NCBI GenBank assembly: GCA_002269645.1
Contig: NIVC01000756.1
Coordinates: 52,477-80,398 of the forward strand
Direction: 5' to 3'
From: Macrostomum lignano
Lineage: Eukaryota
DNA: 27,922 bases
The translations under genes and the position numbers were made by a program. Shown piece by piece: positions 1-25,690 of this stretch (positions are counted from its first letter, which is position 1; each line of letters opens with the position of its first letter). Below the pieces are notes generated by a model. The model saw only the letters and a list, made by a program, of their open reading frames with translations. It was not told where the DNA came from and made no database searches.

Positions 1-319
1 TTGTTTAAACCTACGCATGACGGCTTGGTCTATCTCTGTATCTGTCGTAGTTGTTTTAGAAACTCTATATGCCAAAAAGGCCGTCCTATTGCCCCAGCTG
101 CTTCTTATTAAAGTTACTTCAATTTCCATTAGATTGCATAGCTTAAAACTTAAACTCGAATGTGCCTGATTTTCAGCCAATATTTATTATTTATGATTGA
201 TTAATTGTTGTTCACACTTCAGTCCGTTTGTCATTGAGCATGCGATGACAACACACTGTCCTGTCTGTAGTTGATTTGCCCACTATATAGATGTGTCATT
301 GCTACAGAAGCACTTATAG

Positions 320-526
<207 letters not shown>

Positions 527-616
527 TAATCTCTGGGTTATCCTTGAAATCGCTTGGATCGAATCGTTCAATATACAAACTTCAGCATCCTAAATAGTGC
601 TTAAAGTCACCAATTC

Positions 617-1346
617 AATCGTCTGTAAATCGCCCTGATAATCGTCTGTAAATCGCCTCGATAATCGTCTGTAAATCGCCCCGATAATCGTCTGTAAATC
701 GCCCGATAATCGTCTGTAAATCGCCCGATAATCGTCTGTAAATCGCCCCGATAATCGTCTGTAAATCGCCCCGATAATCGTCTGTAAATCGCCCTGATAA
801 TCGTCTGTAAATCGCCCTGATAATCGTCTGTAAATCGCCCCGATAATCGTCTGTAAATCGCCCCGATAATCGTCTGTAAATCGCCCCCGATAATCGTCTG
901 TAAATCGCCCTGATAATCGTCTGTAAATCGCCCTGATAATCGTCTGTAAATCGCCCCGATAATCGTCTGTAAATCGCCCCGATAATCGTCTGTAAATCGC
1001 CCTGATAATCGTCTGTAAATCGCCCGATAATCGTCTGTAAATCGCCCTGAGAATCGTCTGTAAATCGCCCGATAATCGTCTGTAAATCGCCCTGAGAATC
1101 GTCTGTAAATCGCCCGATAATCGTCTGTAAATCGCCCTGATAATCGTCTGTAAATCGCCCCGATAATCGTCTGTAAATCGCCTCGAAAATCGTCTGTAAA
1201 TCGCCCGATAATCGTCTGTAAATCGCCCTGACAATCGTCTGTAAATCGCCCGATAATCGTCTGTAAATCGCCCTGATAATTGTCTGTTAATCGCCCCGAC
1301 AATCGTCTGTTAATCGCTCTGACAATCATCTTAAAAATCGCCCTGA
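617..1346. repeat. Intronic minisatellite, 22-24 bp unit AATCGTCTGTAAATCGCCC(C/T)GAT, about 31 copies
   Basis: Direct tandem copies inside the PKA intron 494-1510. It explains the repetitive ORFs 590-1234 and 607-1380. Confidence 0.98.
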
Positions 1347-1510
1347 GCCGCCCCAAAGCCGATTTTTTTCGGAAGTTCATAGAATTACTTACCTTGCTTT
1401 TAGCCTCATCAAAATCAGTCTCATCAGTCTACTAAAAATGATAAGTAGTATGATAAGCGCATTGTTATGAAATAAATAAGGCAATTTTCGCTTATTCAAT
1501 TTTTGCCTAG

Positions 1511-1798
<288 letters not shown>

Positions 1799-1857
1799 TG
1801 AAGATTATCGAATTTTTTCTCGCATGGCACAAAAAAAGTAGCATTATCTAGTTGTAC

Positions 1858-2507
1858 CCTAGCCAATCAGAATGATTTTGATGTGTCCTAGCCAATCAGA
1901 AGGATCGAGATAGTTCCTAGCCAATCAAAAGGATCCAAATGTGTCCTGGCGAATCAGAAGGATCCAAATGTGTCCTAGCCAATCAGAAGGATCGAGATAG
2001 TTCCTAGCCAATCAGAATGATTTTGATGTGTCCTAGCCAATCAGAAGGATCGAGATAGTTCCTAGCCAATCAAAAGGATCCAAATGTGTCCTGGCGAATC
2101 AGAAGGATCCAAATGTGTCCTGGCCGATCAGAAGGATCGAGATAGTTCCTAGCCAATCAGAATGATTTTGATGTGTCCTAGCCAATCAAAAGGATCCAAA
2201 TGTGTCCTGGCCAATCAGAATGATCCAGATGTGTCCTGACAAATCAGAAGGATCCAAATGTGTCCTGGCCAATCAGAAGGATCGAGATAGTTCCTAGCAA
2301 ATCAGAATGATCGAGATAGTTCCTAGCCAATCAGAAGGATCGAGATAGTTCCTAGCCAATCAGAAGGATCCAACCAAATGTGTCCTGGCCAATCAGAAGG
2401 ATCCAAATGTGTCCTGGCCAATCGGAAGGATCCAAATGTGTACTGGCCAATCAGAAAGATCCAGATAGTTCATAGCCAATCAGAAGGATCCAACTGAGCC
2501 AATCAGA
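1858..2507. repeat. Intronic minisatellite, 29 bp unit CCT(A/G)GCCAATCAGAAGGATC(N9), about 22 copies, with a 145-bp higher-order repeat
   Basis: The five-unit block starting at 1858 recurs at 2003 and partly at 2148. Confidence 0.97.
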
Positions 2508-2552
2508 ACTCAGGATCTAACTAACCCCGCTGACCCGCCCTTTGCACCCCAG

Positions 2553-2693
2553 GTGTACAAAAAGGAGGTGGAGGCGCCGTTCGTGCCCAAGTCGAAGGGC
2601 CCGGGCGACCCGTCCAACTTCGACGAATACGAAGAGGAGCCGCTGCGGATCGCCAGCTCGGAGAAGTGCGCCAAGGAGTTCGCCGAATTTTGA
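2553..2693 (+). CDS. PRKACA: PKA catalytic subunit, last coding exon (AGC C-terminal tail)
   Basis: Branch-like ctaac at 2521 and acceptor caccccAG|2553. Encodes [46 protein letters not shown], with the FDxY motif and terminal FxxF hydrophobic motif. TGA at 2691-2693. Confidence 0.97.
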
Positions 2694-4122
2694 CCGGACT
2701 GGCAGCCAGTTTGCTGAGCTCGCTGACTCTCTGACCCCCGCGCTCGGGATCTGGTGATTTCGCGTCAGTTTCTGTCCCGTTTATTCCCGTTTGTTTATTT
2801 ATTAATTTGTGTCACTTTGTTTTTTGTTCTACTTTTGATTCAACTGCTTTTAGAAGCAGAAACTGACTTGTCTGCTCTCGACTGGCCGAGTCTGTCGCGG
2901 CTCCCCCAGTCATGTTGCTTGTCTTTTTAAGCATTTCCTTGTGCTTGGGAGGCGAGGAAATCAGGAGGTCGCGAGTTCGAATCAGTTTTTTTCGCATGTG
3001 TTTAATGTTTATTACTATATATATACTCCACTCCGCTATATTTGATTTATTATTGTTATCGAATACTCATTGCTGTAGTCTGGAGATTAACTCGCTAATT
3101 GGATTAATTACCCGCTTTACTGTACTGCCCGTGCCACGTGTTGTCAGAGCCCCCCACAGCAGCCCCCTCCCCACACACCTGTGTTAACTGCGCGTACGTT
3201 ATCGAGATAGTAACTATTAGTAAGCAAAAGTACTTTGCCGTTGTATTATTTCAATCCTTTAGTATTCGAAAGAGACTATGTATCTGTAACTATAAGCGTA
3301 TAGTGCCAGTATCTCGAATTCGCACTCAACTTGTAAATTCTGTTTAACTCTCCGCACAGAGATAGAAAATATTCGTTCTATGCGCCTGACAGTAGACACA
3401 TTAGGATGCGATAAGTAGCAAGTGTTTTTTGTAGACTAGAAATCTTTTCTGTTCAGTCCCAGTGAGTGACAATGCAAGAAACTAATAGTACTAATAGTAG
3501 TGCTAGTCAGACAAGGCAAGGGTCAGTTCAAACTCGGTTTTCTAAACTTTTCAAATAGTACCTCTTGTTTATTTGTTATTTTGGATTTAACTAATTGTTA
3601 ATCCTCTCCTCTCCCTAGCGATCGCGCGACCTATCAAGATGTCTCCGTGTCACATGTAATACCATTCACTGATTCACACTGTCCCGCTTCTAATATTATT
3701 GACTTTTTATTTAGCAGTTTGTGATGCAGCAGTGCGGCTGCCCCTATTGGACAATATTATATACAAATACAAAGGCCTGCTCTGTATTATTTGAGTTTAG
3801 TTTAGACTTTTTGTTTCGGCGTTTTCATGTCACAGAACTTTTCCGCGAGGTAGCACAAACACTCGGGCTTACCTGTGTAAGCTTATCGAATTGTTGCTTT
3901 GCAACTTTAATAATATTTGGTCCCTGATGACAAATTTTCTCTTGTGTTCCTAGAGAATTGACTTTGCAGTATTGTAGTAATTTTCTTTCTTGGGTGGGAT
4001 GAAGAGGAGCAGCTGAGTTCCCCACCCATGAGGACTAAGTGCTGTCCTTCTGCTCTCTGCGTACTTGTGCGTACAAAGTCTGGGATCCGTCGTGAATCCC
4101 CGGATTTAGTGGGTTTGAAAAA

Positions 4123-4974
4123 AGCAGTCAAATTGTCAGCAGTCAAATTGTCACTGATTGTCAGCAGTCAAATTGTCACTGATTGTCAGCAGTCAAATTG
4201 TCAGCAGTCAAATTGTCACTGATTGTCAGCAGTCAAATTGTCAGCAGTCAAATTGTCACTGATTGTCAGCAGTCAAATTGTCAGCAGTCAAATTGTCACT
4301 GATTGTCAGCAGTCAAATTGTCACTGATTGTCAGCAGTCAAATTGTCACTGATTGTCAGCAGTCAAATTGTCAGCAGTCAAATTGTCAGCAGTCAAATTG
4401 TCAGCAGTCAAATTGTCACTGATTGTCAGCAGTCAAATTGTCACTGATTGTCAGCAGTCAAATTGTCAGCAGTCAAATTGTCAGCAGTCAAATTGTCAGC
4501 AGTCAAATTGTCAGCAGTCAAATTGTCAGCAGTCAAATTGTCAGCAGTCAAATTGTCAGCAGTCAAATTGTCAGCAGTCAAATTGTCAGCAAGTCAAATT
4601 GTCAGCAGTCAAATTGTCAGCAGTCAAATTGTCAGCAGTCAAATTGTCAGCAAGTCAAATTGTCAGCAGTCAAATTGTCAGCAGTCAAATTGTCACTGAT
4701 TGTCAGCAGTCAAATTGTCACTGATTGTCAGCAGTCAAATTGTCACTGATTGTCAGCAGTCAAATTGTCACTGATTGTCAGCAGTCAAATATTGTCAGCA
4801 GTCAAATTGTCAGCAGTCAAATTGTCAGCAGTCAAATTGTCAGCAGTCAAATTGTCAGCAGTCAAATTGTCAGCATTCAAATTGTCAGCAGTCAAATTGT
4901 CAGCAGTCAAATTGTCAGCATTCAAATTGTCAGCAGTCAAATTGTCAGCAGTCAAATATTGTCAGCTGTCAAAT
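4123..4974. repeat. Minisatellite, 15 bp unit CAGTCAAATTGTCAG with interspersed 10-bp TCACTGATTG inserts
   Basis: Tandem copies are visible. It is the source of the SAVKL/SQIVS/QQSNC pseudo-ORFs. Confidence 0.98.
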
Positions 4975-5122
4975 GCTAAAAATGTGAATCCCAAGATTCT
5001 TTTCCTACTCATAGAGTCAAAGTTCACTAACAAAACAATAACTTGCGAAAGTAAACTTGAATTCATTCATTGAAAAGTCCGGAAAGCTGTTGTTTTGGTC
5101 TATAGACTTACTCACTTAGGCC

Positions 5123-5200
5123 TAGGGATTGCAATCCTGAGATTGGCCAAATTCCGGGATTAAATCATAGGATCGAAAAAAACGGGATTTTGCAATGTAT
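5123..5200. mobile_element. Possible decayed hAT-like MITE end (TAGGGATTGCAATCC, GGGATT motifs)
   Basis: Starts TAGGG and carries GGGATT/AATCC motifs like the intact element at 19861. No clean second TIR or TSD was found. Confidence 0.3.
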
Positions 5201-5201
5201 A

Positions 5202-5433
5202 TCCAATATACTAAAAATGAGTTGTCTGTATGTATGTGGGTAGGTATGCGATAGATTTCAGAAAAATTAAGCCTGAAAACTAAAAAACTAGAAAACTTTC
5301 AAAGTTTGCTGACTTTGAAACTTCTGTACCGGTGCAAATTAAAAGAACATGATTTAAGGCGAATGATAACTAATTTCGAGTCGCGCACCGTTTGCCTGCC
5401 TGCGGTGCTCGGTGCAGCAACACATCGCCTGTA
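5202..5433 (+). mobile_element. Possible non-autonomous Helitron relic
   Basis: A|TC start followed by CAATATACTAAAAATGAGTTGTCTGTATGTATGT, resembling Helitron 5' ends. Hairpin GCACCG(5385-5390)/CGGTGC(5403-5408). The 3' end is CTGT rather than CTRR, so support is weak. Confidence 0.3.
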
Positions 5434-6282
5434 TATTTTTGGCTTTGCAATTCCTATATCATCAATTTGCCAACCGAAGTAGAACAAATCCACATGTTCT
5501 TAATTATAAATTTCTACGCTATAGTGTCATAAAGTTTACCGAATCGTTTTTATGGCTTGCTAAATAAAATTGCGTCTTTGTTCAGCCTTAGTTTGCATGA
5601 ATTGGGACAAAGCCTTCCGTTTTAGATAAATCACTCGGGCGCCTTGATTTTGTTTGAATGCTTAAGCGGACAGGGGGTCCTTTGGAATGGTGTGAGTTGG
5701 GGTGGGTGGTGGTGGTGTGACTGCTTGGCTGGTTGGCACTGTGGGGGTCTCGGGGGGGGCGACTGAACGATTAAACCAAACTACAACCATTAAGTTTGAG
5801 GCGGGGCGGGAAGAAGGGGTTGAGATTTTATTGCCTTCTTTGTTAACAAGTCACGACAGGACCATTCCACGCCTTGCGTGATGGGCCCGAACTTTTCCTT
5901 ATCTGTTTCAACTGTTGGTTCTAAAAAATTAATTTGCTAACATGTTTCTCTAAGTTTGTAAGATTTAGCTTATAGTCTGGATAAAATTCTTTAGCAAAAA
6001 AGGCAGCTCAAGTGCAATAGAAGCAGCTGTACACATTAACAAAACAAATTTTCTGTCTACTCTTGCTTTGGGGAGGTCTGGGCTTTTCTGGGTCAAGTGA
6101 TGTTAAATGATTCAGATATTGTAAATGTGACAATTATACAAATTCAGATTCCTGGCCGAAGCCAAATTTTGCATTTTGATATCCTGCTGAGATTTTTAAT
6201 TGCTTCAAAATTTCACTTTATTGGAAATTGGAGTTTTTTTATTAACGAACTGCAAAACGATTAACATCAAGATATAAAACAA

Positions 6283-6465
6283 GCACAGCACAGCACATCA
6301 TATCACAGCACATCACATGCTGTGACCTGTGACTGTGATGTGCTGTGCTGTGATGTGATGTTCTGTGCTGTGCTGTGCTGTGCTGTGCTTTGCTGTGCTG
6401 TGCTGTGCTGTGCTGTGCTGTGCTGTGCTGTGCTGTGCTATTGCTTTGCTGTGATGTGCTGTGGC
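6283..6465. repeat. Pentanucleotide microsatellite (GCACA)n switching to its reverse complement (TGTGC)n
   Basis: Left arm is 6283-6317 and right arm is 6318-6465. Confidence 0.95.
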
Positions 6466-7035
6466 AGCTCGTTTCTAATTCTAATCCTGTTTCTACTTCA
6501 TGTATATCAAACAGACGCCAGCCAGATCCTAAAAAAGAACAATGAGTTGAATTGAAATGAAGAGGAAAATAGTGAAACAAAATTTGCTGCACCTAAATAT
6601 GAATATGAAGATAAGAAAAAAAGTGAACGAAATAACGTCCACTTAGACCACTATCTTCTGTTTAATTATACGAGTGGATTTTGTGACCTGTGAGGGCAGA
6701 TAAATGTACAGCAAGGCAAGCTAGAACTCTGCAGAGGGCCAGGGGCATAGCGACTTTCAATTACAAGTTGATGTGATGTGAGTGTTAAGACCTGGCAAAA
6801 GACAAAGTAAAATGTCTAACAAGCATGATAACTCGAAAACATACGACAATGTGTACTTTTTGTAGAATCAAGAAATTTGCAATTGCAATGATAAACTCAT
6901 TGCGAGATATCCTTCTCCATTAAAACTTTATCAATTAATCAGACAAAGTTGAAGAGCTTGCCATTCTACTACCAGTAGGCTGTATTGAAAATATTAGCAA
7001 ATTTAAATCGTTAGCATCTTGAATTCTTCCGCTCA

Positions 7036-7078
7036 GCCAATCACCGACCGGGGAGGGGGGAGGCACGGATTGATTGGC
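7036..7078. promoter_or_regulatory. Putative nanos proximal promoter: two oppositely oriented CCAAT boxes flanking a G-rich box
   Basis: AGCCAATCA at 7035-7043, GGGGAGGGGGG at 7050-7060 and TGATTGGC at 7071-7078, 130-170 bp upstream of ATG 7209. Confidence 0.55.
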
Positions 7079-7208
7079 GGGTAAACCTTGACTTAAACCT
7101 TGGGAGTTTTCTCAATTCCTTTCTATTCCATCCACCCTGCTGCTCTGCCCATAGTTCAACTGTAGCAAAACTGGTAATCATTTATCAACCAGCATTTTTT
7201 GTTCAATT

Positions 7209-7276
7209 ATGTCAGAATTTCCATACGAAATCGAGCTGCAGCTGCAGCTACTGTTTCTGGCTTTGCAGAAGGACAG
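7209..7276 (+). CDS. nanos: nanos, predicted coding exon 1 (MSEFPYEIELQLQLLFLALQKD)
   Basis: ATG at 7209 and strong donor CAG|gtaaat at 7277, phase 2. It joins acceptor tcactccAG|7480 in frame (AG+T = Ser), giving a 173-aa protein. Confidence 0.7.
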
Positions 7277-7479
7277 GTAAATATTTTTAAATATGCTGAC
7301 TCGGTTTATATTCCATGATATGATATGAGTAGAATAGAATCATACCAGTTATTTAGTAACTGTCATATTGGCAGTGTAAATGACAACTACAAATGTATGT
7401 AGTCTATAGAGTGCAGATTTAGGCTTTAACAACTTTGACATGTTGACATCCTGCTGGTGCTGATCTTTCATCACTCCAG

Positions 7480-7933
7480 TCCGTCCGGTCACCACCCGCC
7501 ATGCAGCAGCGAGCCGGTGCTGGTGCAGGGCACCTATAGCGCCGATAGCGGCAGCAGCGTCGCCGCTAGCATCGACCCGAGCCCGAAGCCGAAGTCGTTC
7601 CTCCAGCCGCTGCTGCCCGTCGGAGCCCCTCAGCAGCACGAGCAGCTTCGGGCCATCCTGCAGAAGCACGAGCGCCGGCCCTACCGCCCAGTGCTGTGCG
7701 TGTTCTGCAAGAAGAACAACGAGCCCGAGTCGTTCTACCGCGGCCACACCGTCAAGGACGGCAACGGGGACGTCGTCTGCCCGGTGCTGCAGAGCTACGA
7801 GTGCCCGATCTGCCACGCCACCGGGACGGCCGCGCACACCGTCAAGTACTGCCCGGTTGGCAACGGGGTCGCCAGGCGCGGGGGCGGCGGCGGCGGCGGC
7901 GGCAGAGTCTGGAGTCAGGCCAAGCGTAGCTAA
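7480..7933 (+). CDS. nanos: nanos, exon 2 with tandem CCHC zinc fingers
   Basis: Exact Nanos spacing C-x2-C-x12-H-x10-C-x7-C-x2-C-x7-H-x4-C (CVFC...H...C...CPIC...H...C) at 7697-7852. Gly-rich C-terminal tail. TAA at 7931-7933. Confidence 0.97.
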
Positions 7934-8050
7934 AAAATGATTTTAACAAAGTTGCTCGAGAAATTTAAACAAATTAATTGCGAATTGGTGTGCATTGTCT
8001 TCACAAACTGTTTCTATTCTGCTTTTTTGGTTTTTTAACAAAATCCCAAT

Positions 8051-8208
8051 TGTAAATATTTCATTTCATTTTATCTCATAAACCCCTCGCATTTTACTGT
8101 CCTTTTCTACTCATTTATTATTGATAAATCATAACCATAAGCCACATTTATCTTCATATTCTAATCAATCATTTCATTTCAATTTCCGTTCTTCAGTTTT
8201 TGTAAATA
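8051..8208 (+). promoter_or_regulatory. Two Pumilio response elements (UGUAAAUA) in the nanos 3'UTR
   Basis: TGTAAATA at 8051-8058 and 8201-8208, between the stop (7933) and AATAAA (8252). Confidence 0.8.
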
Positions 8209-8251
8209 GCAATTTTAAATTTGACATTAACCAATTCCGCTTTGCTAATTC

Positions 8252-8257
8252 AATAAA
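8252..8257 (+). terminator. Probable nanos polyadenylation signal AATAAA
   Basis: First AATAAA after the stop, at the end of a U-rich 3'UTR of about 320 nt. Confidence 0.65.
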
Positions 8258-8292
8258 ATATCTAAATATTTGTTATACCGATGTAGGGAACT

Positions 8293-8348
8293 GTCGTCAT
8301 GGCAACTAATCGCGTCTGACGTGGTCACGTGACAACAGGCTGGGCGGG
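8293..8348. promoter_or_regulatory. Compact motif cluster: X-box, CRE/ATF half-site, GTCACGTGAC E-box, GC box
   Basis: GTCGTCATGGCAAC 8293-8306, TGACGT 8317-8322, GTCACGTGAC 8324-8333 and GGGCGGG 8342-8348. Confidence 0.6.
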
Positions 8349-8607
8349 CTAGTAATTAAATTGGGCTGGCCAGGACTGCTAGCGCACCTGCTGTTTGTTG
8401 CAAAACTCAGTTTCCATTTTCTAAATGCACCTAAATTGACGAATTGCAATTGTAATTGTGTTTCTGGCTAGTGGCGCAGTTCTAAATACACAGTTTGAAA
8501 CACATCACCAACACCAATGGAGCTGGAGTCCTGCAGTTTCAATATTTTTCGACCTCTTGAAATTTGAAAAGGCTTTTTAATTCAGTGATTCAAGTTTCAA
8601 GCAATTT

Positions 8608-9232
8608 AATGAGCTGCCAGCCTGTCACTCTTGTCTCAGTCAATGAGCCGCCAGCCTGTCACTCTTGTCTCAGTCAATGAGCCGCCAGCCTGTCACTCTT
8701 GTCTCATCCAATGAGCCCCTAGCCTGTCACTCACTTGTCTCATTTAATGAGCCCCCAGCCTGTCACTCTTGTCTCAGTCAATGAGCCCCTAGCCTGTCAC
8801 TCTTATCAATCAATAAGCTGCTAGCCTGTCACTCTTGTCTCAGTCAATGAGCTGCCAGCCTGTCACTCTTGTCTCAGTCAATGAGCCCCTAGCCTGTCAC
8901 TCTTATCAATCAATAAGCTGCTAGCCTGTCACTCTTGTCTCAGTCAATGAGCCGCCAGCCTGTCACTCTTGTCTCAGTCAATGAGCTGCTAGCCTGTCCT
9001 CTTGTCTCAGTGAATGAGCTGCCAGCCTGTCACTCTTGTCTCATCCAATGAGCCCCTAGCCAGTCACTCACTTGTCTCATTTAATGAGCCCCCAGCCTGT
9101 CACTCTTGTCTCATCCAATGAGCCCCTAGCCTGTCACTCACTTGTCTCATTTAATGAGCCCCCAGCCTGTCACTCTTGTCTCATTCAATGAGCCGCCAGC
9201 CTGTCACTCTTGTCTCAATCAATAAACTGCCA
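8608..9232. repeat. Minisatellite, about 34 bp unit AATGAGCCGCCAGCCTGTCACTCTTGTCTCAGTC, about 18 copies
   Basis: Tandem copies with 32-37 bp variants, lying between the convergent nanos and tetraspanin-like genes. Confidence 0.96.
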
Positions 9233-9574
9233 CCTTGATCTAGATAAGCTGCGAGGTTAAATTTTAAAGCAAATACTTTTCTTGCTACTGCAAGTAGCAA
9301 GTATTGTAAATGAAGTGTTTGCATGTATTTGATACGAGCTAAATGTGCATTTAGTGAACGATAAATGAAAATCGAGAAGCAAGCTCAGCTGAGTAACGCA
9401 GCTCGTAATACAAAAGCGAGATAAAATCTACTTAATGAAATGATGGGTGTCGGTTTGCTAAACTCGCTGCACACTCGTAGACTTGACGACTGGACTGGGC
9501 TGTACCAGCAAACGATAGCAGTTGCCCCAGTTGGTGGGATTCCCCATTCTCGGTTGGTGCGATTCTAATGAATT

Positions 9575-9580
9575 TTTATT
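9575..9580 (-). terminator. Probable polyadenylation signal of the tetraspanin-like gene
   Basis: tttatt on + (AATAAA on -), the first one after the stop at 10030. Confidence 0.5.
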
Positions 9581-9677
9581 GAGTTTTTTTACAGGATTCG
9601 TTTTTGCAATTTGTAAAGCATAGCATAGGAAGCTTCCAGTGCGGAACCGCGCAACCATTAAAAAATAGACAGCTGAT

Positions 9678-9985
9678 GAGATTCTGTCAGAGATTCTGTC
9701 AGAGATTATGTCAGGGATTCTGTCAGGGATTCTGTCAGGGATTCTGTCAGGGATTCTGTCAGGGATTCTGTAAGGGATTCTGTCAGGAATTCTGTCAGGG
9801 ATTCGGTCAGGGATTCTGTCAGGGATTCTGTCAGGAATTCTGTCAGGGATTCTGTCAGGGATTCTGTCAGGGATTCTGTCAGGGATTCTGTCAGGGATTC
9901 TGTCAGGGATTCTGTCAGGGATTCTGTCAGGGATTCTGTCAGGGATTCTGTCAGGGATTCTGTCAGGGATTCTGTCAGGGATTCT
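9678..9985. repeat. Minisatellite, 12 bp unit GGGATTCTGTCA, about 25 copies
   Basis: Near-perfect tandem array. It is the source of the IPDR/QGFC/ESLT pseudo-ORFs. Confidence 0.98.
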
Positions 9986-10029
9986 TTCCTCACTCACACC
10001 CACTAATCGCAGAAGCGGTCACACCGCTT

Positions 10030-11137
10030 TCACATCTGCTTGTCCATATCGAAAGTGACTCGGCCGCGACCAGCGCCAACCATTGGCAGCAGCGGCAGCG
10101 CGGCCTTCTCAGCAACCTCGGCGGTCGCAGACGAAGCCGACGTGGAGGCCGTCATTCCTTGCTGTCTGTGCAGATGTAGCGGAGGCCGCGGCGGCAGCGT
10201 GTTGACCAGGTCGGTGCCAGCGTCCATATTGACGTGAATCTCCAACGTGCGGATCTGGCCGTTGCCCTGCTGCTGAGCTGCCGCTGCCGGCTCCTCTTTG
10301 TCCCCGCCGACCCCAGCGCCGCCACCGTCGAGCCGGAGGCTTTTCTCCATCCGCTTCCGACGGACGTCGTAGCCGCAGAGAGCCACCGCCAGAGCAAAGT
10401 GACAGCCGGCGAAGACGAACAGCAGCGAGTAGGTGACGACCTGGTGCAGCTGCTTGCGGGCGGCGATGGCCTCGAGCAGGTCGGCAATGCAGTTGTCCTT
10501 GTGGAAGGCGAGCGCCAGACCCGGCGGCGGCTGTCGCTTTTCCCTTCTTCCAGGCGTCGCTGATGCTGTCGTGTGGTTGCACAGCCGCGGCAGGCGCCGG
10601 TCCAGCTTCCGGCAGCTGGCGAGGCCATCGCGGAACGGCCGGAAGCAGCTGAGACCTGGCCGCGAGCTGTCCAGTGTTGGACGGCCGGCGCAGGTCGCGT
10701 CCAGCGCCTCCCCCAGCTGCTCGCGCAGGTGATCATCGATGCGCACAGTCTGGTCGAAGGCGACCATGTAGCCGGCCAGGACGGACTCGCCGCACAGGCC
10801 GACCAGGAGGAAAACGCCCAGCGCCTTCGGGCTCTGGCAGCAGCAGGAGCAGAAGATGCTCAGCCAGACCAGGGAGACAACAAAGAACGGCACGGCCGCC
10901 TTCAGGCAGGGGTCTCGCTCCAAGAAGGAGGCGCAGCCGCCGAGCTGGCGGGTGCAGACCAGGTAGCCGATGCCGCTGGCCCCGCTCTGGGCGGCGGTGA
11001 GGCCCAGCAGGCCGCAGAGCAGGCCGGCCAGGCAGTGCCAGCTGCGCCTGTAGCGGCTGACCTGCGGCCGGCTGGGCGAGGCCCGCGGCAGCTGCAGGAT
11101 GCTGTCCACTAGGCAGCAGCACATGGCGGCGGAGCGC
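10030..11137 (-). CDS. Divergent four-transmembrane tetraspanin-like protein, main exon
   Basis: Long GC3-rich ORF with four hydrophobic segments. A CSCCC cluster lies between TM2 and TM3, TM3 contains a Glu, and a loop of about 105 aa with 5 Cys and an NHT sequon precedes TM4. Acceptor cccatcccgccgttgcgcAG|11137. Internal GCCGCCATG at 11124. Coding status is secure; the family assignment rests on topology only. Confidence 0.8.
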
Positions 11138-11278
11138 CTGCGCAACGGCGGGATGGGAAGTCGCGACGTTTATGATGGAGCTGACTTGTTAAGCTGTACA
11201 TGGCTGTCTAGAACGTTCCCATAGACGTAAAAAACAATCTCGTAAATTTTTTGCATCATTGGAAACAAAAGTTTTTCT

Positions 11279-11665
11279 GAGAATCGCCCCTCGGAGAATC
11301 GCCCCTCGGAGAATCGCCCCTCGGAGAATCGCCCCTCGGAGAATCGCCCCTCGGAGAATCGCCCCTCGGAGAATCGCCCCTCGGAGAATCGCCCCTTGGA
11401 TTCAATTTAATCGCCCTTCGGAGAATCGCCGCTTGGATTCAATTTAATCGCCCTTCGGAGAATCGCCCCTCGGATTCAATTTAATCCCCCCTCGGAGAAG
11501 TTCCCCTCGGAGAATCGCCCTCGGAGAATCGCCCCTTGGATTCAATTTAATCGCCCCTCGGAGAATCGCCCCTCGGAGAATCGCCCTCGGAGAATCGCCC
11601 CTTGGAGTCAATTTAATCGCCCCTCGGTGAATCGCCCCTCGGAGAATCGCCCTTCGGAGAGTCGC
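11279..11665. repeat. Intronic minisatellite, 15 bp unit GAGAATCGCCCCTCG with TTGGATTCAATTTAATCGCCC variants
   Basis: Tandem copies inside the predicted intron 11138-11925. Confidence 0.96.
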
Positions 11666-11925
11666 CTGTAAGGCACCAAGAAGACTGAGCATCCTAGTAG
11701 GAGGTTCGATACCTCTACTAGCCAATTTAATCTACTTGAAATGTCTTCTCATACTCTGGTCCAACCAGAGAAATTCTTGTTTTTTCTGTATCTAGTTGGA
11801 GATTTGCACTCAGAGGTTTAGAATCAGAATTTGGTGCTCAGAAACGATAAAAGTGCACATAATTGAGACTTCCGCTCCGGCTGCAGGCTTTGGCAGCCGA
11901 GTTTTGAGCAGCTGGCGCAACTCAC

Positions 11926-12128
11926 TGGCTGATGAATGCCTTGTAGCTTCGTGTGTGCCGCTGCGGCTGCTGCTGCAAGTGCTCCGCCGCCTCGGCCTGA
12001 CCATTGTCAGGTAGGAACTGTAAGTCAGCGCCGTTGCTAAGGTTACCGGTATTAGAGCCAATTAGCAGCCGCCGCCGCTGCTGCTCTGCCGCGCTGTCCA
12101 AAGTGAACACCGCTGACGGCTTTGTCAT
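11926..12128 (-). CDS. Predicted upstream coding exon of the tetraspanin-like gene (MTKPSAVF...SYKAFISQ)
   Basis: ATG at 12128 and consensus donor CA|GTGAGT at 11925, phase 2. It matches the phase-2 acceptor at 11137 (CA+G = Gln, then RSAAMCCC). Joined protein is 436 aa. The frame stays open upstream to 12284, so the true start is uncertain. Confidence 0.65.
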
Positions 12129-13777
12129 CCGCGGTGCCGGGGAGCGGCGCTCTGCCCTGCCCAGCTCGCGGCAGTTTTGTTGCAAAGTTATCCCGCTGGC
12201 CGGTCCAGAGCGGGGCAGAGCGAGGGGACGGGGGGGCAGCTCGCTTTGAGCAGAAGAGAGCGGAGCGGCGTTGCAATTGGGATTTTAGCAGTGAGTGAAT
12301 AAGGGGAGATCTGCCGGGTTACTGGGAGTGGCTGGCGCGAGCTCTGTCATAAATAATCCAGGACTGGGTCGGGATTGGGGAAGGGGAACAGACGGGAAGA
12401 TTCTCCCCTCCCCTCGCCGATCCCCATCTCGTCTCTGCTCCGCAACGGCCAAACTGCAGCGGATTGCCGCCTGCGACGCCCCCGCTTTCAGCCACCGCCG
12501 CCGCTTCCACCTCTCCGCCGCCTTTACTTTTTCCTTTTTCCCCATCTCTTCTCCCGGCTGCTTGCCGGGCTGAGGGGGGGGGGGGGGGCAAGTTTCGGGA
12601 GGCCACGGGAATCGGTCAGAAATGAGCTGAATGAGGAATGGGAGCGTAAAATGGGAGCGGGGGAGTTGGGGGGCGCATCTCCAGCCCGGCGGCGAGTTTG
12701 ACCTGCCGTGGCTCTGGTCCCAATCCTGTCGCCTTGTACTTTCCGACATCGCAACTCGCGGGGGGCAGGCCTAATTATTAGCAAATATAATTTTCCACTT
12801 GTTGCCGGGCATGAATGAATAATTATCCCGCACTAAATTATGGGCAGGGAGTAGCAACAGCCCGTGTTCTCGGCGCAAATTCTATAAGACAAGAGCCATG
12901 CTGAACTCGCGAGCTGGCGTTCAACTTGAGCACTGAATAACTGAAGGAAGGCCTGCCCTGCTCCCGTGTGTCTCTGTAGAAAGCGAACAGCGCTTGAAAG
13001 CTAAGAGAAAGTGAAGGCTTGAAGGAGACAGAGCAAACTAGTACAAGTGGGGGGGGGTCTATAGCCTGCCTTTCTGCTCAGCATTGGGGAAAACTTGACC
13101 CAACAAGCCATTCGCCTGTGTCGTCAAAGTCAAACTTTGCGGTGACCGATTCCTCTTGCACTCCACTGCAACGCCTGCCTGACAAGTCTACCCCTTGATC
13201 CGGGCTTCTGTCAGCCCTAACTCTGCCTCTGCCCCGGATTTGGGTGCACTAATTGAGTGCCAGACTGACAGGCAGACAGACAGCAGGCAGTTTGCGTTCA
13301 GGGACCAAATTGACTGCTGACGGAAGCCTCTAACGACAGGCGGGGTTGCCGTGGGAGGTTCGGAGAGTAATTAGCCGCCTGGGCTGCCTAATGCGCCGCT
13401 GGATTTGCCGACAGCAGCGCGGCCTAATCTGATCGACGTCAATGGGAGCGCTCGACACTTGTGCAGGCAAAGGCACACAGGCCATCCGCACGCCTCATCG
13501 ATGGGCTGTAGGCGATAAGTAGACTCAGGATGCAGGGTGGAGGCTGCGAGACTCATGCAAGGCGAATAATTCGATTTCATCATCTCCTACTAAATTGGGT
13601 CTAACCACGCTTTGAACCTCTGTCAACCAGACCCTTTGTGCATCGGTGCTATGTTTCGTTTGTAACCCATACCCGCGGCCCAAAACATAAACAAACCGAA
13701 AATACATAAATCTCCGTCGAAGACAGGAACTCCTCCTTAAACAAAATTGGTGTTGGACTTTTAGCGGCTTTCAGAAG

Positions 13778-14243
13778 CTCCGCTAGTCCCCAACCTTCAG
13801 GGGACTCCGCTAGTCCCAACCTTCAGGGGACTCCGCTAGTCCCCAACCTTCAGGGGACTCCGCTAGTCCCCAACCTTCAGGGGACTCCGCTAGTCCCCAA
13901 CCTTCAGGGGACTCCGCTAGTCCCCAACCTTCAGGGGACTCCGCTAGTCCCCAACCTTCAGGGGACTCCGCTAGTCCCCAACCTTCAGGGGACTCCGCTA
14001 GTCCCCAACCTTCAGGGGACTCCGCTAGTCCCCAACCTTCCTGGGGCTCCGCTAGTCCCCAACCTTCCTGGGACTCCGCTAGTCCCCAACCTTCAGGGGA
14101 CTTCGCTAGTCCCCAACCTTCCTGGGGCTCCGCTAGTCCCCAACCTTCAGGGGACTCCGCTAGTCCCCAACCTTCAGGGAACTCCACTAGTCCCCAACCT
14201 TCAGGGGACTCCGCTAGTCCCCAACCTTCAGGGGACTCCGCTA
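13778..14243. repeat. Minisatellite, 27 bp unit CTCCGCTAGTCCCCAACCTTCAGGGGA, about 17 copies, each with a 7-bp hairpin
   Basis: AGTCCCC/GGGGACT stem with an 8-nt loop in each unit. No unique spacers. Confidence 0.97.
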
Positions 14244-14524
14244 CTCCGCAGATTTCAACGCCCAACACGCCGACTACTTGCAGAAAAAGTGCAACAAAGT
14301 TTCCTATAAAAATATTACTCTGCATCTGCTGCTGAAATTCTATACACCGGAAGCGGCTCTCGCCTTGGCATCAAATATACGAGCTGGTAATTTCCGAGCT
14401 CAGCAACTTCGGAAAAATCCGATTGGTTGCTACACCCGGGATCTGGAGGAATTATTTTAGACAAGATCGAGTTGCCAATTATTATGCTAATGAGCTGCTG
14501 CTGCGTGGCCAAGATTTGCATGCC

Positions 14525-14622
14525 CTGACTGACTGACTGACTGACTGACTGACTGACTGACTGACTGACTGACTGACTGACTGACTGACTGACTGACTGA
14601 CTGACTGACTGGCTGACTGACT
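14525..14622. repeat. (CTGA)n tetranucleotide microsatellite, about 24 copies
   Basis: Direct observation. Confidence 0.98.
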
Positions 14623-16517
14623 AACATATAATTCCCTAGTCCAAGTGCTTCGTGTCAGGAGTCCTTGACCCGGCACAAAGCTGCAGGTTAATGACGTGTC
14701 GCTGGCCGATTTTGGCCTCATTTGGCTGGCCAGATCGAAGCGGCCGCTTGAAGAACAGCCGCAGCTGTCAATCAATTCGGGCCGGCCATGCTGGGTGCCA
14801 TTGGGACCCGAGTTCCCTCTCCCCGGCTGTGTCCAAACCAGCCTTATCGATTCGGATTTTACTCATCCGAGCAAGCCGATATATCGACACCAAATCCCCG
14901 AGCTGAGTTTTTGTCCTTTCTGTCTGCCGAAGCAAAAATCCCCAGAGTGCCCCCCCTCCAAACCCTCCCCGCTTCTCGAGTTCCGCCGGTGCCTCCCCAG
15001 CCCAGATGCGGATTTGACAGGCCTCCGGAGCAAGTGGATAACTGCGCACCCGTTTAATGGAGCGTCCGCCGGGTGGGCCCAGCGCCGCCTTACCGAAGGA
15101 GCAGACGAAGCCGAAGTCGCAGGATCCACAGCCGATTCTCCGAGCTTCTGCCGCCGCCGCCGCCGCCTCGGCCAGGGAGATTCGCCGTCAAAACCGCCGG
15201 GTGGGGATCCCCTTTTAGAGCAGGGATCGGAGTCAATCAAATTTGGATGCCAGCTCCCTCGCGCAGTGGCTCGCCGCCGTGTCCAACAGAGAGCGAGCGG
15301 CGAGAGCTGCTCCCCTGCTGCTCTCCATCGCTGTTGCTTCGCCTCCGCCAAGCCCGCGTGCTTTAGTGCGGGATTTTTCTCCCCCAGATACCGGCAGCGG
15401 GTGGGGGATGCCGGGCTGGCTAACAAGCGCCGAGAAACTGGAGGTCCGGAGGGTTGGCAGCAGTTCGAAGTTTGGCGACTAGCGAACGGCCGAGTAGCCA
15501 GCCTCCAGCGAAGCCTCATCTTATACTCCCAAATGAGGGATTTGAGAACCGCGGAGGCGCAGCAGCGGGACAGGCGGGAAGACAAAGCAAGGCAGGGCTG
15601 GCCTCCGGGATCTGCTCTAGAGTAAAAGGCCCAGCAGTAAAAGGGATTTCAAGTCGGCCCCAAACTGCAAATCAAATCCCAATAAGAGTTTCTCCCCTGA
15701 CCGCTGGCCTTGGCTCACCCAAGTTTATCCCCGCAGTCCCGCGCTGGATTTGAATAATTAAGTTTATACCCTCTGTATATCGTAGCGAAATAAAATACAG
15801 TGCAATGCTTGCTCATCAATATGATTAAAATCTACGATTTTTATTAGTTAATAATTGACTGAATTCAGTTGCCAGCTCGATCGGGTGGGTTGGCAGTTCA
15901 ACTCAGTCAGAGAGTTACAGCGAATGTCAGCAACTATTCTAGAAATTACAACTCAAACTTGAAAGCACGCACAACAACTAAATGTGCAATATACTCAAAA
16001 AGCACAGCTTAGAACGCGGGGAGTTTGCTGCTACTTCTAGTACGAAGCAATGTGCACTGACACTATTTTGAACCCTCCTCTGTAAAAAAATTGACTCGCC
16101 GTACGAAGAAGGCCAGGCCGGGACAACCTTCTGGGCGCTCTGGCAGGCGCGGGGTGACACACAATTTCCAGCCAAAAAACAAGTTGATCAGAGAGGTCAA
16201 AGCCGGGAAACTCACAGGACGGACTCGAGGTGCGGGATGCATGCAGAATTTTTTTTTAAAAATCTTCGGAATTCTGCCACAGAGCAGCAAGACAAGTGTG
16301 CAGGGCGTGGCTGGAATAGCGACAGACAGAATGAAGCAAAAATAGGAAAATATTAGAAAATGTGGATCCACGAGCATGGATACACCACTAACATCAGAGC
16401 TCAAGAAAATTAATAAAAGACCAGGAAATGTTAGCGTAAAGGCAAACACAACATTTACTTCTACAAAATTCATTTTAACAACTACAAAATTTTAAGGCTT
16501 TGAAGAGATGTCGGATA

Positions 16518-16655
16518 GGGGTAGAGAAGCCTGAATGACACGGGGTCAAAGGGTAGCGGAGCCTGAAGGACAAGGGGTCAAGGGGTAGTGGAGCCTGAAG
16601 GACACGGGGTCAAGTGGTAGCGGAGCCTGAAGGACACGGGGTCAAGGGGTAGCGG
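16518..16655. repeat. Short minisatellite, 32 bp unit GGGTAGCGGAGCCTGAAGGACACGGGGTCAAG, about 4 copies
   Basis: Direct observation, downstream of the ARL6 stop. Confidence 0.9.
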
Positions 16656-16773
16656 ATGATTGCCAAATCCGGCTGCATGTATTTTGAGCCTACAGTGTAC
16701 AACCTGAACTCTCTTCTCCTGGGTACAAATGAGTTCTAGATATTTCACCAAATAACCCCGCATTATAGTCACA

Positions 16774-16787
16774 GTTGCCATGACAAC
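16774..16787. promoter_or_regulatory. RFX X-box GTTGCCATGACAAC
   Basis: One mismatch from the ideal palindrome GTTGCCATGGCAAC and a full match to GTHNYY-AT-RRNAAC. It lies about 23 bp beyond the ARL6 stop. Confidence 0.7.
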
Positions 16788-16809
16788 ACGTCTTGGACCA
16801 GTCAACCAG

Positions 16810-17355
16810 TTATTTCCTCGGTGGCAGCCGGCGCACCTCCTCGGCCAGCCAGTCGATGCCAGCCTGCAGGCCCTCACCGGAGATGGCATTGCTAGGCACG
16901 ATGTTCCAGGACTTGTTGCTGAGGCAATCCTTCAGACCGAGCATCTGCGTGCACTTCACAGGTGACAGGGCATCTTTGTGGTCCATCTTGTTGGCGTAGA
17001 ACAGGAACGGGATGCCCCGTGTCCGGATGGCGTCGTGGGCCAGCAGCTGTTCCAGTTCGTCCTTGGCCACCACGAAGCGCAGCTTGTCCGAGCTGTCAAT
17101 CACAAAGATGATGGCATCGCAGTCGCGGTAGTAGTGCTCCCACATGTTGCGGTAGCGGCCCTGCCCGGACATGTCAAAGCAGGTCATGCGCAGATTCTTC
17201 ATCTCGAGGCGTTCAACGTTGAAGCCAACAGTCGGAACAATGTTCTGCATGGTGGCGTTGGCCGGCTTCAGCTTGTTGATGATGGTCGTCTTGCCACTGT
17301 TGTCGAGTCCCACCACCAGCACATTTGCCTCTCGCTTGCCCAGAGCGCTGCCCAT
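16810..17355 (-). CDS. ARL6: ADP-ribosylation factor-like GTPase 6 (BBS3), uninterrupted ORF of 181 aa
   Basis: ARL6-type motifs GLDNSGKTT (G1), [22 protein letters not shown] (G3), [18 protein letters not shown] (G4) and SNAISGEGL (G5). N-terminal MG. Confidence 0.95.
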
Positions 17356-18019
17356 CCCGGACGAGATAAAGCAGAGGGTTTAAAATTTATTGAATATGTT
17401 TAAATATGCGCAGGTATCATCTAGCTATATCATACTTAAAACTGGAAAGCCAGACCTATCGCATTTATCAAATACTTTACTGGCATCACACTTTATAGCT
17501 CGTATTGAAAATTCTGGCTATATCAAAAAGTATTCAATTAATTAGTAACTCATATTAAAATACGTAAGAAACTGTACAGAAGCACCGGAAGAGTCATTAG
17601 TAATTAGTAAGTACAAGGTACTTTAGTTCCAAAAGTCAGATACATACACGATCATTACTAGTAGTTTTTAGCTTGTGCAAAGCAAAACCAAGAAAAACCA
17701 GTTTCATTTGAATCAGGGAAAGATAGCAGAAGATTGCTTGAATAAATGAGCCTTGTGCACTGAAAGTATATAATAATCTAGAGATGTGTTATTTGATTAT
17801 TGAATCTTCTTAAAAAATTTGAGATATCATTTTACTGCATTTAAGAAACAAATAATTGTAAATGCAAGTAGGAATTGCTAAGAAACTATAATCTTCTTGT
17901 TATTAACTCATCGAGCTGATTTGTATTAAATAAAAAAATACTGGCACAATTATTATTCGTTTAACAGTATTGTGAAGAATAATATAGGATAACAAATATC
18001 CAGTCAAATAATTGCCATA

Positions 18020-18678
18020 TCCTATATACTAATAATGAAAATCTTTCTTGCTTGCTTTTTTATTGCCATATAAACGACCTAAAGTTAACATCCAATAAAA
18101 TTGTTTTGGGTGATCTTAGTATGACAAACTCTGAGTCTCAGCCATAATATTTCAGAGCTTTCCAAGCTAAGCGCTCACAAATTTAAATCGACAAGCTTCA
18201 TTTTTCTTCAAGTTTGGAAGGATGCGAGCAATTCCTTCGCATTCCTAAAAAACTTTGCTTTCAACCAAGTTAAATACAGCTAAATACACAGTAGTATTGC
18301 TTAAATAAAAATTTAAAGTAGAAATTTTATTTTAAAACTATTTTTATTTTACATGCAAAGCAAAATAGTTGTTCTTTAGTCATTTTGCTTGATTACAATA
18401 TGAAGGTTTTGTTTTTATAAAATAACATTAGGACAATTATCGCGGATTCATTGGGTTCATTCCAAGAAACCAAGGCAGATCAAAATCAATAAATATGCTT
18501 ACGCTTACCAACTGCAGTAAAGAAAGGGCTCATCGTCGGTCATTTGATTAAAAATTAAAAGCACCTTTCTTTACCTAAAGCGAAATCATAGCAGTATCGT
18601 TTTACCAATGAATGGCCCTTATTGTAGTAGTGTTTGGGACTAGCACCGATTGGCCCCCTGGCAATGTATGCAGTCTAG
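18020..18678 (+). mobile_element. Possible non-autonomous Helitron
   Basis: A|TCCTATATACTAATAATGAAAAT 5' end, imperfect hairpin ATTGGCC/GGCAAT at about 18649-18665, then CTAG|T at 18675-18679. Confidence 0.33.
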
Positions 18679-21903: not shown

Positions 21904-21970
21904 GTTGGTGGCTCGCTGGCTTGTTGCGGGGCGGCTTCTGGCTTACTATTTGGGTTGCTCTAATTCAGTA

Positions 21971-23379: not shown

Positions 23380-23403
23380 GTAAGAGCCCGCAAATCTGTC
23401 TGA

Positions 23404-23670: not shown

Positions 23671-23675
23671 ATCAA

Positions 23676-25577: not shown

Positions 25578-25690
25578 TAACTCAATGTTTCAAGTAGGCA
25601 TCGATGTGAAAAATCGTGTTGCGGCGATCTCTGTAGTCATTGCCAGGGGCTTCATGCAAAAGTTTTAACAGTTTCTGATTTCAATTCCAG

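What the first reader, a model, noticed from the sequence alone, without database searches (positions are those of the whole stretch)
8048..8208. nanos 3'UTR carries two perfect Pumilio elements with Nanos-favourable flanks
Seen: AAT-TGTAAATA (8048-8058) and TTT-TGTAAATA (8198-8208), 150 nt apart, plus CPE-like TTTTAT (8069) and TTTTACT (8092). I found no such octamer in the presumed PKA or tetraspanin 3'UTRs. Established: Pumilio binds UGUAHAUA, and Drosophila Nanos clamps Pumilio onto sites with A/U-rich bases just upstream. Inference: a Nanos-Pumilio negative feedback loop on nanos mRNA itself, with possible CPEB activation.
Basis: partly seen in the sequence, partly recalled or inferred. 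Interest (0 to 1): 0.72.

Follow-up and report, generated by a model that had tools for sequence, protein, structure and literature searches.

The report
Pumilio sites in flatworm nanos 3'UTR
A nanos gene of the flatworm Macrostomum lignano carries two perfect Pumilio-binding motifs in its presumed 3' untranslated region, more than chance predicts, so Pumilio control of nanos (perhaps a self-limiting loop, as already proposed in flies) is a sensible but untested prediction, not a surprise.

Summary
TGTAAATA occurs at 8051-8058 and 8201-8208 (+). Both copies lie between the stop codon of a two-exon nanos gene (7209-7276 and 7480-7933; Pfam zf-nanos 9.8e-25) and the first canonical AATAAA (8252-8257).

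They are the only two UGUA tetramers in this G-poor stretch of about 340 nt. The chance of two or more such sites is 0.0002 to 0.013, depending on the null model. The A/U-rich "Nanos-favourable" flanks and the CPE-like motifs are at chance level.

The window comes from Macrostomum lignano. Two further genomic copies of the locus were recovered. Site 1 is identical in all three. In one otherwise intact copy, site 2 has lost its last base (TGTAAATT). The copies are about 99% identical even outside the UTR, so they say nothing about constraint. No orthologous UTRs could be obtained.

The zinc-finger residues that contact RNA in fly Nanos are conserved. The fly Pumilio-contacting tail is not.

Negative autoregulation of nanos through Pumilio has already been proposed in Drosophila. 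This is therefore a plausible new member of a known kind, supported by sequence only, and of moderate to low interest.

The parts
7209..7276 (+). nanos exon 1: ATG at 7209, 22 codons plus 2 nt
   Evidence: GT at 7277 and AG at 7478-7479 join it in frame to exon 2. Exon 2 has no in-frame ATG. Between the window and copy L002, exon 1 has one synonymous change, while the 80 nt upstream and the intron are heavily changed.
7277..7479 (+). nanos intron, 203 nt, GT...AG
   Evidence: Read from the sequence. Length is 198-206 nt in the other two copies, with the same ends.
7480..7933 (+). nanos exon 2 with the two CCHC zinc fingers (7697-7855) and stop codon TAA 7931-7933
   Evidence: Pfam PF05741 zf-nanos, 9.8e-25, residues 96-148. 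phmmer to PDB 5KL1 chain B and 3ALR, 1e-17.
7934..8275 (+). Presumed nanos 3'UTR, about 340 nt (74% A+U, 8.5% G)
   Evidence: Runs from the stop codon to about 20 nt past the first canonical AATAAA. There is no other A[AT]TAAA in between. The 3' end is inferred from sequence signals only.
8051..8058 (+). Pumilio-binding element 1, UGUAAAUA, preceded by C-A-A-U (8047-8050)
   Evidence: Identical in all three genomic copies. A UUUUA core follows 10 nt downstream (8069).
8201..8208 (+). Pumilio-binding element 2, UGUAAAUA, preceded by U-U-U-U (8197-8200). It fits DDWWUGUANAUA and lies 44 nt upstream of the poly(A) signal.
   Evidence: In copy L002, AGCAA at 8208-8212 is replaced by TTTT, giving UGUAAAUU.
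8213..8217 (+). UUUUA (core CPE) 35 nt upstream of the poly(A) signal. Further UUUUA at 7941, 8033, 8069 and 8092.
   Evidence: The count is at chance level (5 against 3.4, P 0.24).
8252..8257 (+). First canonical poly(A) signal, AATAAA
   Evidence: It is followed by T/G-rich TATTTGTTATACCGATGTAGGG at 8265-8286.

Best explanation
The two UGUAAAUA octamers are working Pumilio response elements in the roughly 340-nt 3'UTR of a Macrostomum lignano nanos mRNA.

**Proposed mechanism, all inferred.** A PUF-family Pumilio protein binds each 8-mer and recruits the CCR4-NOT deadenylase. That shortens the poly(A) tail and lowers translation and stability of nanos mRNA. This would keep Nanos protein low where Pumilio is active.

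**Where it would matter.** In planarian flatworms, pumilio is needed in all neoblasts, while nanos marks only the germline ones. The simplest role is therefore to silence nanos transcripts outside, or on exit from, the germline stem-cell state. Where Nanos itself is present it may join Pumilio on these sites, especially on site 2. That would make the loop self-limiting, as proposed for Drosophila nos.

**Shown:** gene identity, motif positions, and enrichment over chance.

**Inferred:** the 3' end of the mRNA, Pumilio binding, the direction of the effect, and any part played by Nanos.
For: - Two perfect 8-mers lie between the stop codon and the first AATAAA.
- P(two or more) is 0.0002-0.013 under three null models.
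- Both of the only two UGUA in the UTR extend to the same full 8-mer, and the surrounding sequence is unrelated, so this is not an internal duplication.
- Site density is 5.8 per kb, against 0.49 per kb per strand in AT-rich intergenic DNA of the same window and 0.125 overall.
- No other sense-strand site falls in any other presumed 3'UTR of the window.
- The context matches what makes such sites effective in human and frog reporter libraries:
  - UGUAAAUA is among the more effective variants, and A/U-rich flanks increase repression (PMC11602169). Flanks here are about 22-25% G+C.
  - Sites near the mRNA 3' end work better (bioRxiv 10.1101/2023.10.18.562922). Site 2 is 44 nt from the poly(A) signal.
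- Precedent in Drosophila: nos mRNA is depleted 6.7-fold by Upf1-Nos in a largely Pum-dependent way, and negative autoregulation is proposed (PMC11501031). The pum mRNA carries a perfect NRE (PMC5785226).
- Flatworm pumilio is needed for neoblasts, and nanos marks germline neoblasts (PMC3552358).
- The fly Nanos residues forming the pocket for the base at -1 (F321, T366, K368, Y369; PMC4995099) are identical here (F98, T143, K145, Y146).
Against: - There is no transcript, binding or expression data, and the 3' end is inferred.
- There is no test of conservation. The only comparable sequences are two near-identical copies from the same species. Even the non-UTR DNA at 8213-9400 is identical in them, so they carry no information on constraint.
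- In copy L002, whose nanos reading frame is intact, one of only two changes in the UTR removes the last base of site 2.
- About 19% of Drosophila 3'UTRs carry a Pumilio element, so one such site is common (PMC5785226).
- The predicted unpaired probability of the two sites (about 0.45) is below the UTR mean of 0.60.
- The P values are post hoc.
- The fly Nanos tail that contacts Pumilio is not conserved (PMC4995099).
Confidence: 0.5

Rival explanations
1. Chance. The two octamers are fortuitous in an A/U-rich, low-complexity UTR and do nothing.
For: The finding was selected post hoc from 28 kb. With the empirical rate of local AT-rich DNA, P is only 0.013. The UTR also holds other repeated 8- to 11-mers such as TTTTAACAAA and ATTTCATTTCA. 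Site 2 is imperfect in one intact copy. Three other distinct nanos loci could be examined (L003, L006 and the L004/L005/L007 group). Only L003 has a site within 800 nt downstream, and the very AT-rich L006 has none.
Against: Shuffle P values are 0.0002-0.002. Both UGUA extend to the identical 8-mer (P about 0.0015, or 1.7e-4 for identity). The gene is exactly the partner of Pumilio, for which such control has been proposed in flies (PMC11501031).
Confidence: 0.27
2. Pumilio acts as a co-factor of CPEB. The elements work with UUUUA-type cytoplasmic polyadenylation elements to mask and later activate maternal nanos mRNA in oocytes, as in the Xenopus cyclin B1 type of code, instead of simply repressing it.
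For: Site 1 is followed by UUUUAU 10 nt downstream, and by UUUUACU a further 17 nt on. Site 2 is followed 4 nt later by UUUUAAA, 35 nt upstream of AATAAA. UUUUA near the poly(A) signal is the core CPE in frog, mouse and human oocytes (bioRxiv 10.1101/2023.10.18.562922). Planarians have CPEB homologues that act in the gonads (abstract of PMC5544531, listed; paper not read).
Against: UUUUA and CPE counts are at chance in this T-rich UTR (P 0.24 and 0.66). There is no evidence for this code in flatworms.
Confidence: 0.1
3. The UGUA of site 2 is a CFIm (NUDT21) upstream element that helps 3'-end cleavage and polyadenylation, not a Pumilio site.
For: Its UGUA lies 51 nt upstream of AATAAA, about 70 nt from the expected cleavage site. 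From my own knowledge, not tested here, this is the zone where CFIm-bound UGUA elements are found in animals. UGUA is kept in the L002 variant.
Against: CFIm needs only UGUA, which does not explain the full 8-mer or its exact repetition 150 nt upstream, where it is too far from the poly(A) signal. The two roles do not exclude each other.
Confidence: 0.08

Closest known systems
Drosophila nanos mRNA negative autoregulation by Nos+Pum (PMC11501031, which also cites earlier neuromuscular-junction work)
   Same: The same gene pair and the same proposed logic: Pumilio, with Nanos, acts on the 3'UTR of nanos mRNA to lower it.
   Different: In the fly the sites were described as noncanonical, and the evidence is functional (6.7-fold depletion by Upf1-Nos, Pum-dependent). 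Here the sites are two canonical 8-mers and the evidence is sequence only, in a flatworm.
hunchback Nanos response elements (NBS+PRE, DDWWUGUANAUA; PDB 5KL1)
   Same: Two elements in one short 3'UTR. Site 1 has the AAU-UGUA junction of hb NRE2, and site 2 fits the 12-mer consensus. The zinc-finger residues that hold the -1 base are conserved.
   Different: No Brat site or Box A was assessed. Site 1 has C at -4. The Nanos C-terminal region that contacts Pumilio in Diptera is absent or not alignable (PMC4995099).
Feedback sites in mRNAs of PUF-pathway components (for example the perfect NRE in Drosophila pum mRNA, PMC5785226)
   Same: A regulator of the pathway carries the pathway's own recognition element in its 3'UTR.
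   Different: Here the mRNA encodes the partner (Nanos), not the PUF protein itself.
Xenopus-type PBE + CPE + hexanucleotide arrangement (cyclin B1-like)
   Same: A Pumilio element lies next to UUUUA motifs and close to AAUAAA (8201-8257).
   Different: The U-rich motifs are at chance frequency here, and nothing shows that such a code exists in flatworms.

Membership tests
Nanos gene (zf-nanos) | Two consecutive CCHC zinc fingers with Nanos spacing | tested here: met
   Pfam PF05741, 9.8e-25, 87 bits against a cut-off of 27. Alignment to fly and zebrafish Nanos structures at 1e-17.
Pumilio response element (PRE/PBE) | Exact match to UGUANAUA (UGUAHAUA) | tested here: met
   TGTAAATA at 8051 and 8201.
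Pumilio response element (PRE/PBE) | Lies in the 3'UTR of the mature mRNA | tested here: inconclusive
   Both sites lie between the stop codon (7933) and the first AATAAA (8252), with no canonical signal in between. No transcript or 3'-end data could be reached. nanos is not even annotated in the public assembly.
Pumilio response element (PRE/PBE) | More frequent than composition predicts | tested here: met
   P 0.0002-0.013, post hoc.
Pumilio response element (PRE/PBE) | Conserved in orthologous UTRs | tested here: inconclusive
   Only within-species copies were found. Site 1 is present in 3 of 3 and site 2 is perfect in 2 of 3. Flanking non-UTR DNA is equally identical, so there is no power. 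The metagenome scan gave too few nanos loci.
Pumilio response element (PRE/PBE) | Bound by a PUF protein, and mutation changes expression | not testable with these tools
   Needs EMSA, CLIP and reporters.
Fly-type Nanos response element (NBS+PRE clamp site) | DDWW immediately upstream of the PRE | tested here: inconclusive
   Site 2 is UUUU, which fits. Site 1 is CAAU, which fails at -4 but has the AAU of hb NRE2 (PMC5785226, PMC4995099). A/U flanks are expected by composition (P 0.16).
Fly-type Nanos response element (NBS+PRE clamp site) | Nanos zinc-finger residues that contact the upstream bases | tested here: met
   F98, T143, K145 and Y146 align with fly F321, T366, K368 and Y369 (numbering from PMC4995099).
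Fly-type Nanos response element (NBS+PRE clamp site) | Nanos C-terminal region that contacts Pumilio repeats 7-8 | tested here: not met
   The alignment to 5KL1 chain B stops at the end of the zinc fingers (query residue 149). The 24-residue tail is Gly-rich and unrelated. PMC4995099 states that this region is conserved only within Diptera.
CPEB-type cytoplasmic polyadenylation element | UUUUA(U) close to the poly(A) signal and above chance | tested here: not met
The motifs exist (8069, 8092, 8213), but counts equal expectation.

The most novel reading that the evidence does not exclude
Pumilio-mediated control of nanos mRNA, including Nanos-dependent negative feedback, is ancestral to protostomes or bilaterians. 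In this flatworm it would use two canonical sites, which are easier to dissect than the noncanonical fly sites. It would help set the soma/germline decision of neoblasts by keeping nanos silent wherever Pumilio acts without enough Nanos input.
Probability: 0.15. Interest if true: 0.55.

Novelty: new member of a known kind. Interest (0 to 1): 0.3.

Why it matters
**Biological stake.** In flatworms, nanos expression is what separates germline from somatic neoblasts, and how it is restricted is not understood. A Pumilio switch in its 3'UTR would give a concrete, testable post-transcriptional mechanism in an animal with working transgenesis and RNAi.

**Evolutionary stake.** It would also extend the recently proposed fly nanos autoregulation to a distant phylum.

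**Limit.** As it stands this is a motif-level prediction of a familiar kind. Pumilio elements are common, and regulators of this pathway are already known to carry them.

Tried and rejected
1. **Homologue search with the Nanos protein.** One distant hit only (P0001, 37% identity, a Tara Oceans contig). A second search with the zinc-finger region alone found nothing. No close orthologues were therefore available.
3. **Organism identification.** The ARL6-like gene showed the organism to be Macrostomum lignano. It also gave two more copies of the locus. They are too similar (about 99%) to measure constraint.
4. **Metagenome scan for nanos loci.** It returned 4 loci from 2 organisms. Together with L003 they gave one downstream Pumilio element, TGTAAATAAA overlapping a poly(A) signal. 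Gene ends were uncertain because of introns. This is too little for any enrichment test.
5. **Rfam and tRNA scans of the window.** Nothing found.
6. **RNA folding of the UTR.** The structure is weak (-27.8 kcal/mol over 342 nt) and the sites are neither especially open nor closed. Not informative.
7. **Internal duplication as the source of the two sites.** Rejected, because the flanks are unrelated.
8. **Overlap with the 3' end of the convergent - strand gene.** Rejected. Its AATAAA is at 9575-9580 on the - strand.
9. **Smaug-type CNGG loops.** None in the UTR.

Full report
**1. What is in the sequence**

The + strand reads cccAATTGTAAATAttt at 8045-8061 and cagTTTTTGTAAATAgca at 8194-8211. 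A pattern search finds TGTAHATA seven times on both strands of the window, against 1.39 expected from whole-window shuffles. The + strand sites at 8051 and 8201 are two of the seven. TTTTAT at 8069 and TTTTACT at 8092 are also present.

**2. The gene**

- The ORF 7457-7933 has a Nanos zinc-finger region but no in-frame ATG.
- A 68-nt first exon (7209-7276, ATG at 7209) joins it in frame through a 203-nt GT...AG intron (7277-7479).
- The 173-residue product hits Pfam zf-nanos at 9.8e-25.
- It aligns over residues 95-149 with Drosophila Nanos in the Nanos-Pumilio-RNA crystal structures 5KL1 and 5KL8, and with zebrafish Nanos 3ALR, each at about 1e-17.
- The stop codon is at 7931-7933.
- The first canonical poly(A) signal after it is AATAAA at 8252-8257. 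The next are ATTAAA at 8355 and AATAAA at 9221. T/G-rich sequence follows at 8265-8286.

Any mRNA that uses the first canonical signal therefore has a 3'UTR of about 340 nt containing both octamers. Site 2 would be 44 nt upstream of the signal. This 3' end is inferred from sequence only.

**3. Organism and other copies**

- The single-exon ARL6-like gene at 16810-17355 (-) is 99-100% identical to a protein annotated in Macrostomum lignano, locus tag BOX15_Mlig007684g3.
- Its contigs in assembly GCA_002269645.1 gave two more copies of the locus: L001 (NIVC01000756.1) and L002 (NIVC01002916.1).
- Both contain the nanos region. nanos is not among the genes called there.
- From my own knowledge, several near-identical copies fit the partly duplicated genome described for this species.

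**4. What the copies say**

- *L001.* The 3'UTR is identical to the window. Its coding region has a 1-nt deletion, a 1-nt insertion and a 6-nt deletion inside the second zinc finger. It is either a decaying copy or an assembly error.
- *L002.* The nanos frame is intact. The N-terminal part differs by many amino acids, while the zinc fingers are identical.
- *L002 UTR.* It shows only two changes. One is a shifted A/T run at 7937-7940. The other replaces AGCAA at 8208-8212 with TTTT, which turns site 2 into TGTAAATT. Site 1 is untouched.
- *No power for constraint.* From 7766 to 9400 the two sequences are otherwise identical, including 1.1 kb that is not UTR. The identity of the UTR is therefore no evidence of constraint.
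- *The hit on site 2 is not significant either.* A random event would overlap one of the two sites with a probability of about 0.1.
- By the fly rules, UUUU-UGUAAAUU would still count as an "NBS + relaxed PRE", a class that needs Nanos for binding (PMC5785226).

**5. Chance**

The stretch 7934-8280 is 31% A, 18% C, 9% G and 42% T.

| Test | Result |
|---|---|
| Mononucleotide shuffles, mean sites per UTR | 0.064 |
| Mononucleotide shuffles, P(two or more) | 0.002 |
| Dinucleotide shuffles, mean sites per UTR | 0.034 |
| Dinucleotide shuffles, P(two or more) | 0.0002 |
| Poisson, rate of the window's AT-rich intergenic DNA (17400-21450, 0.49 per kb per strand) | P = 0.013 |
| Both of the only two UGUA extend to [ACU]AUA | P about 0.0015 |
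| A/U at -3 to -1 of both sites | P = 0.16 |
| CPE-like set, observed against expected | 2 vs 2.1 |
| UUUUA, observed against expected | 5 vs 3.4 (P 0.24) |

- The flanks of the two sites are unrelated, so they are not an internal duplication.
- All P values are post hoc.
- The octamers are more than chance. The A/U flanks and the CPE-like motifs are not.

**6.

- No + strand match exists in 1-8050. This covers any 3'UTR of the PKA catalytic-subunit gene, whose last exon ends ...KEFAEF* at about 2693.
- No - strand match exists in 8000-17400. This covers the convergent - strand gene at 10030-11145, whose AATAAA is at 9575-9580 (-).
- That ORF has no Pfam match, so calling it a tetraspanin is unverified.

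**7. Established knowledge that bears on mechanism**

- The fly Nanos-Pumilio consensus is DDWWUGUANAUA. About 19% of fly 3'UTRs have a Pumilio element and 8% have the extended form. One element suffices for repression, and more elements give more (PMC5785226).
- In the crystal structure, hb NRE2 is AAAUUGUACAUA. Nanos F321, T366 and Y369 form the pocket for -1U, and K368 also makes contacts. The Nanos C-terminal region binds Pumilio repeats 7-8. That region "substantially diverges" outside Diptera, so the interaction cannot be predicted elsewhere (PMC4995099).
- Here the four zinc-finger residues are conserved (F98, T143, K145, Y146). The alignment ends with the zinc fingers, and the 24-residue tail is Gly-rich.
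- In human cells, UGUAAAUA and UGUAUAUA outperform UGUACAUA, and A/U-rich flanks increase repression (PMC11602169).
- In frog embryos, Pumilio elements promote deadenylation and work better near the 3' end. UUUUA is the core CPE (bioRxiv 10.1101/2023.10.18.562922).
- In Drosophila, nos mRNA is depleted 6.7-fold by Upf1-Nos but only 1.3-fold by a mutant that cannot be recruited by Pum. The authors propose negative autoregulation and note earlier hints from the neuromuscular junction involving noncanonical sites (PMC11501031).
- In planarians, pumilio RNAi causes neoblast loss, and nanos is the determinant that separates germline from somatic neoblasts (PMC3552358).

**8. Most likely mechanism**

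The octamers are Pumilio response elements that recruit deadenylation and repression to nanos mRNA (confidence about 0.5). A Nanos contribution, which would make this a true feedback loop, is possible but weaker (about 0.2-0.25 overall). It rests on fly-specific protein contacts that are not conserved, and on flanks that carry no information.

Rivals:
- Chance (0.27).
- A Pumilio-CPEB activation code (0.1).
- A CFIm upstream element for site 2 (0.08). This does not exclude a Pumilio role.

**9. Cross-species test attempted**

- The protein database holds no close Nanos relative.
- The single metagenome scan gave four loci from two organisms.
- With the Tara Oceans contig L003, only L003 has a downstream element, TGTAAATAAA at +598, overlapping a poly(A) signal.
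- Gene ends are uncertain, so no conclusion is possible.

**10. Verdict**

- It is a new member of a known kind: a Pumilio-pathway gene carrying the pathway's own element, with the same idea already proposed for fly nanos.
- Interest is moderate to low. It is a clean and easily tested prediction in a tractable flatworm. It is not surprising, and it is supported by sequence alone.

Noticed in passing
window 8317-8333: About 45-60 nt past the presumed nanos poly(A) site lies TGACGTGG (8317-8324) overlapping a perfect 10-bp palindrome GTCACGTGAC (8324-8333). This is an E-box of the CLEAR/USF type. It is identical in all three genomic copies and is possibly a promoter element of a neighbouring transcription unit.
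   Followed up: no
window 8608-9223: A tandem array of about 18 copies of a 34-bp unit (AATGAGCCGCCAGCCTGTCACTCTTGTCTCAGTC) lies between the convergent nanos and the - strand gene. The window holds at least a dozen further minisatellite arrays, for example 4123-4974, 9680-9985, 13778-14247, 21976-22576 and 26396-26921.
   Followed up: no
window 617-1346: A 23-bp tandem array (32 copies) has a + strand unit containing TGTAAATC, a 7-of-8 match to the Pumilio element. It lies upstream of the PKA exon at 1526-1801, presumably in an intron.
   Followed up: no
L001 18900-20561 (- strand), equivalent to window 7485, 7697 and 7820-7825: In the copy on NIVC01000756.1, nanos has a 1-nt deletion and a 1-nt insertion that shift the frame over about 70 codons. 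A 6-nt deletion also shortens the second zinc finger (HATGTAAHT to HATAAHT). It is a decaying copy or an assembly error.
   Followed up: partly
L002 10229-11931 (- strand), equivalent to window 6932-7765: The window and the L002 copy differ strongly upstream of about 7766: a promoter block at 7143-7174 is replaced, the intron has indels, and the Nanos N-terminal part has many amino-acid changes plus a 3-codon insertion. They are virtually identical from 7766 to at least 9400. This mosaic suggests recombination or gene conversion between copies.
   Followed up: partly
L001 and L002 (GCA_002269645.1): nanos is not among the genes called on these contigs of the public M. lignano assembly, and no identical protein is in the 5.8-billion-protein collection. 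The gene appears to be unannotated there.
   Followed up: partly
Its identity is open.
   Followed up: partly
L003 1661-1670: In a marine metagenome contig (Tara Oceans) encoding a distant Nanos (37% identity), TGTAAATAAA lies 598 nt after the called stop codon. It is a Pumilio element fused to a poly(A) signal.
   Followed up: no
window 21493-26174 (+): A multi-exon gene with PUB (22925-23383) and UBX (25770-26174) domains, a UBXN6/UBXD1-like protein, has minisatellites in its introns. Three TGTAHATA matches cluster at 21045-21125, just upstream of its first ORF.
   Followed up: no
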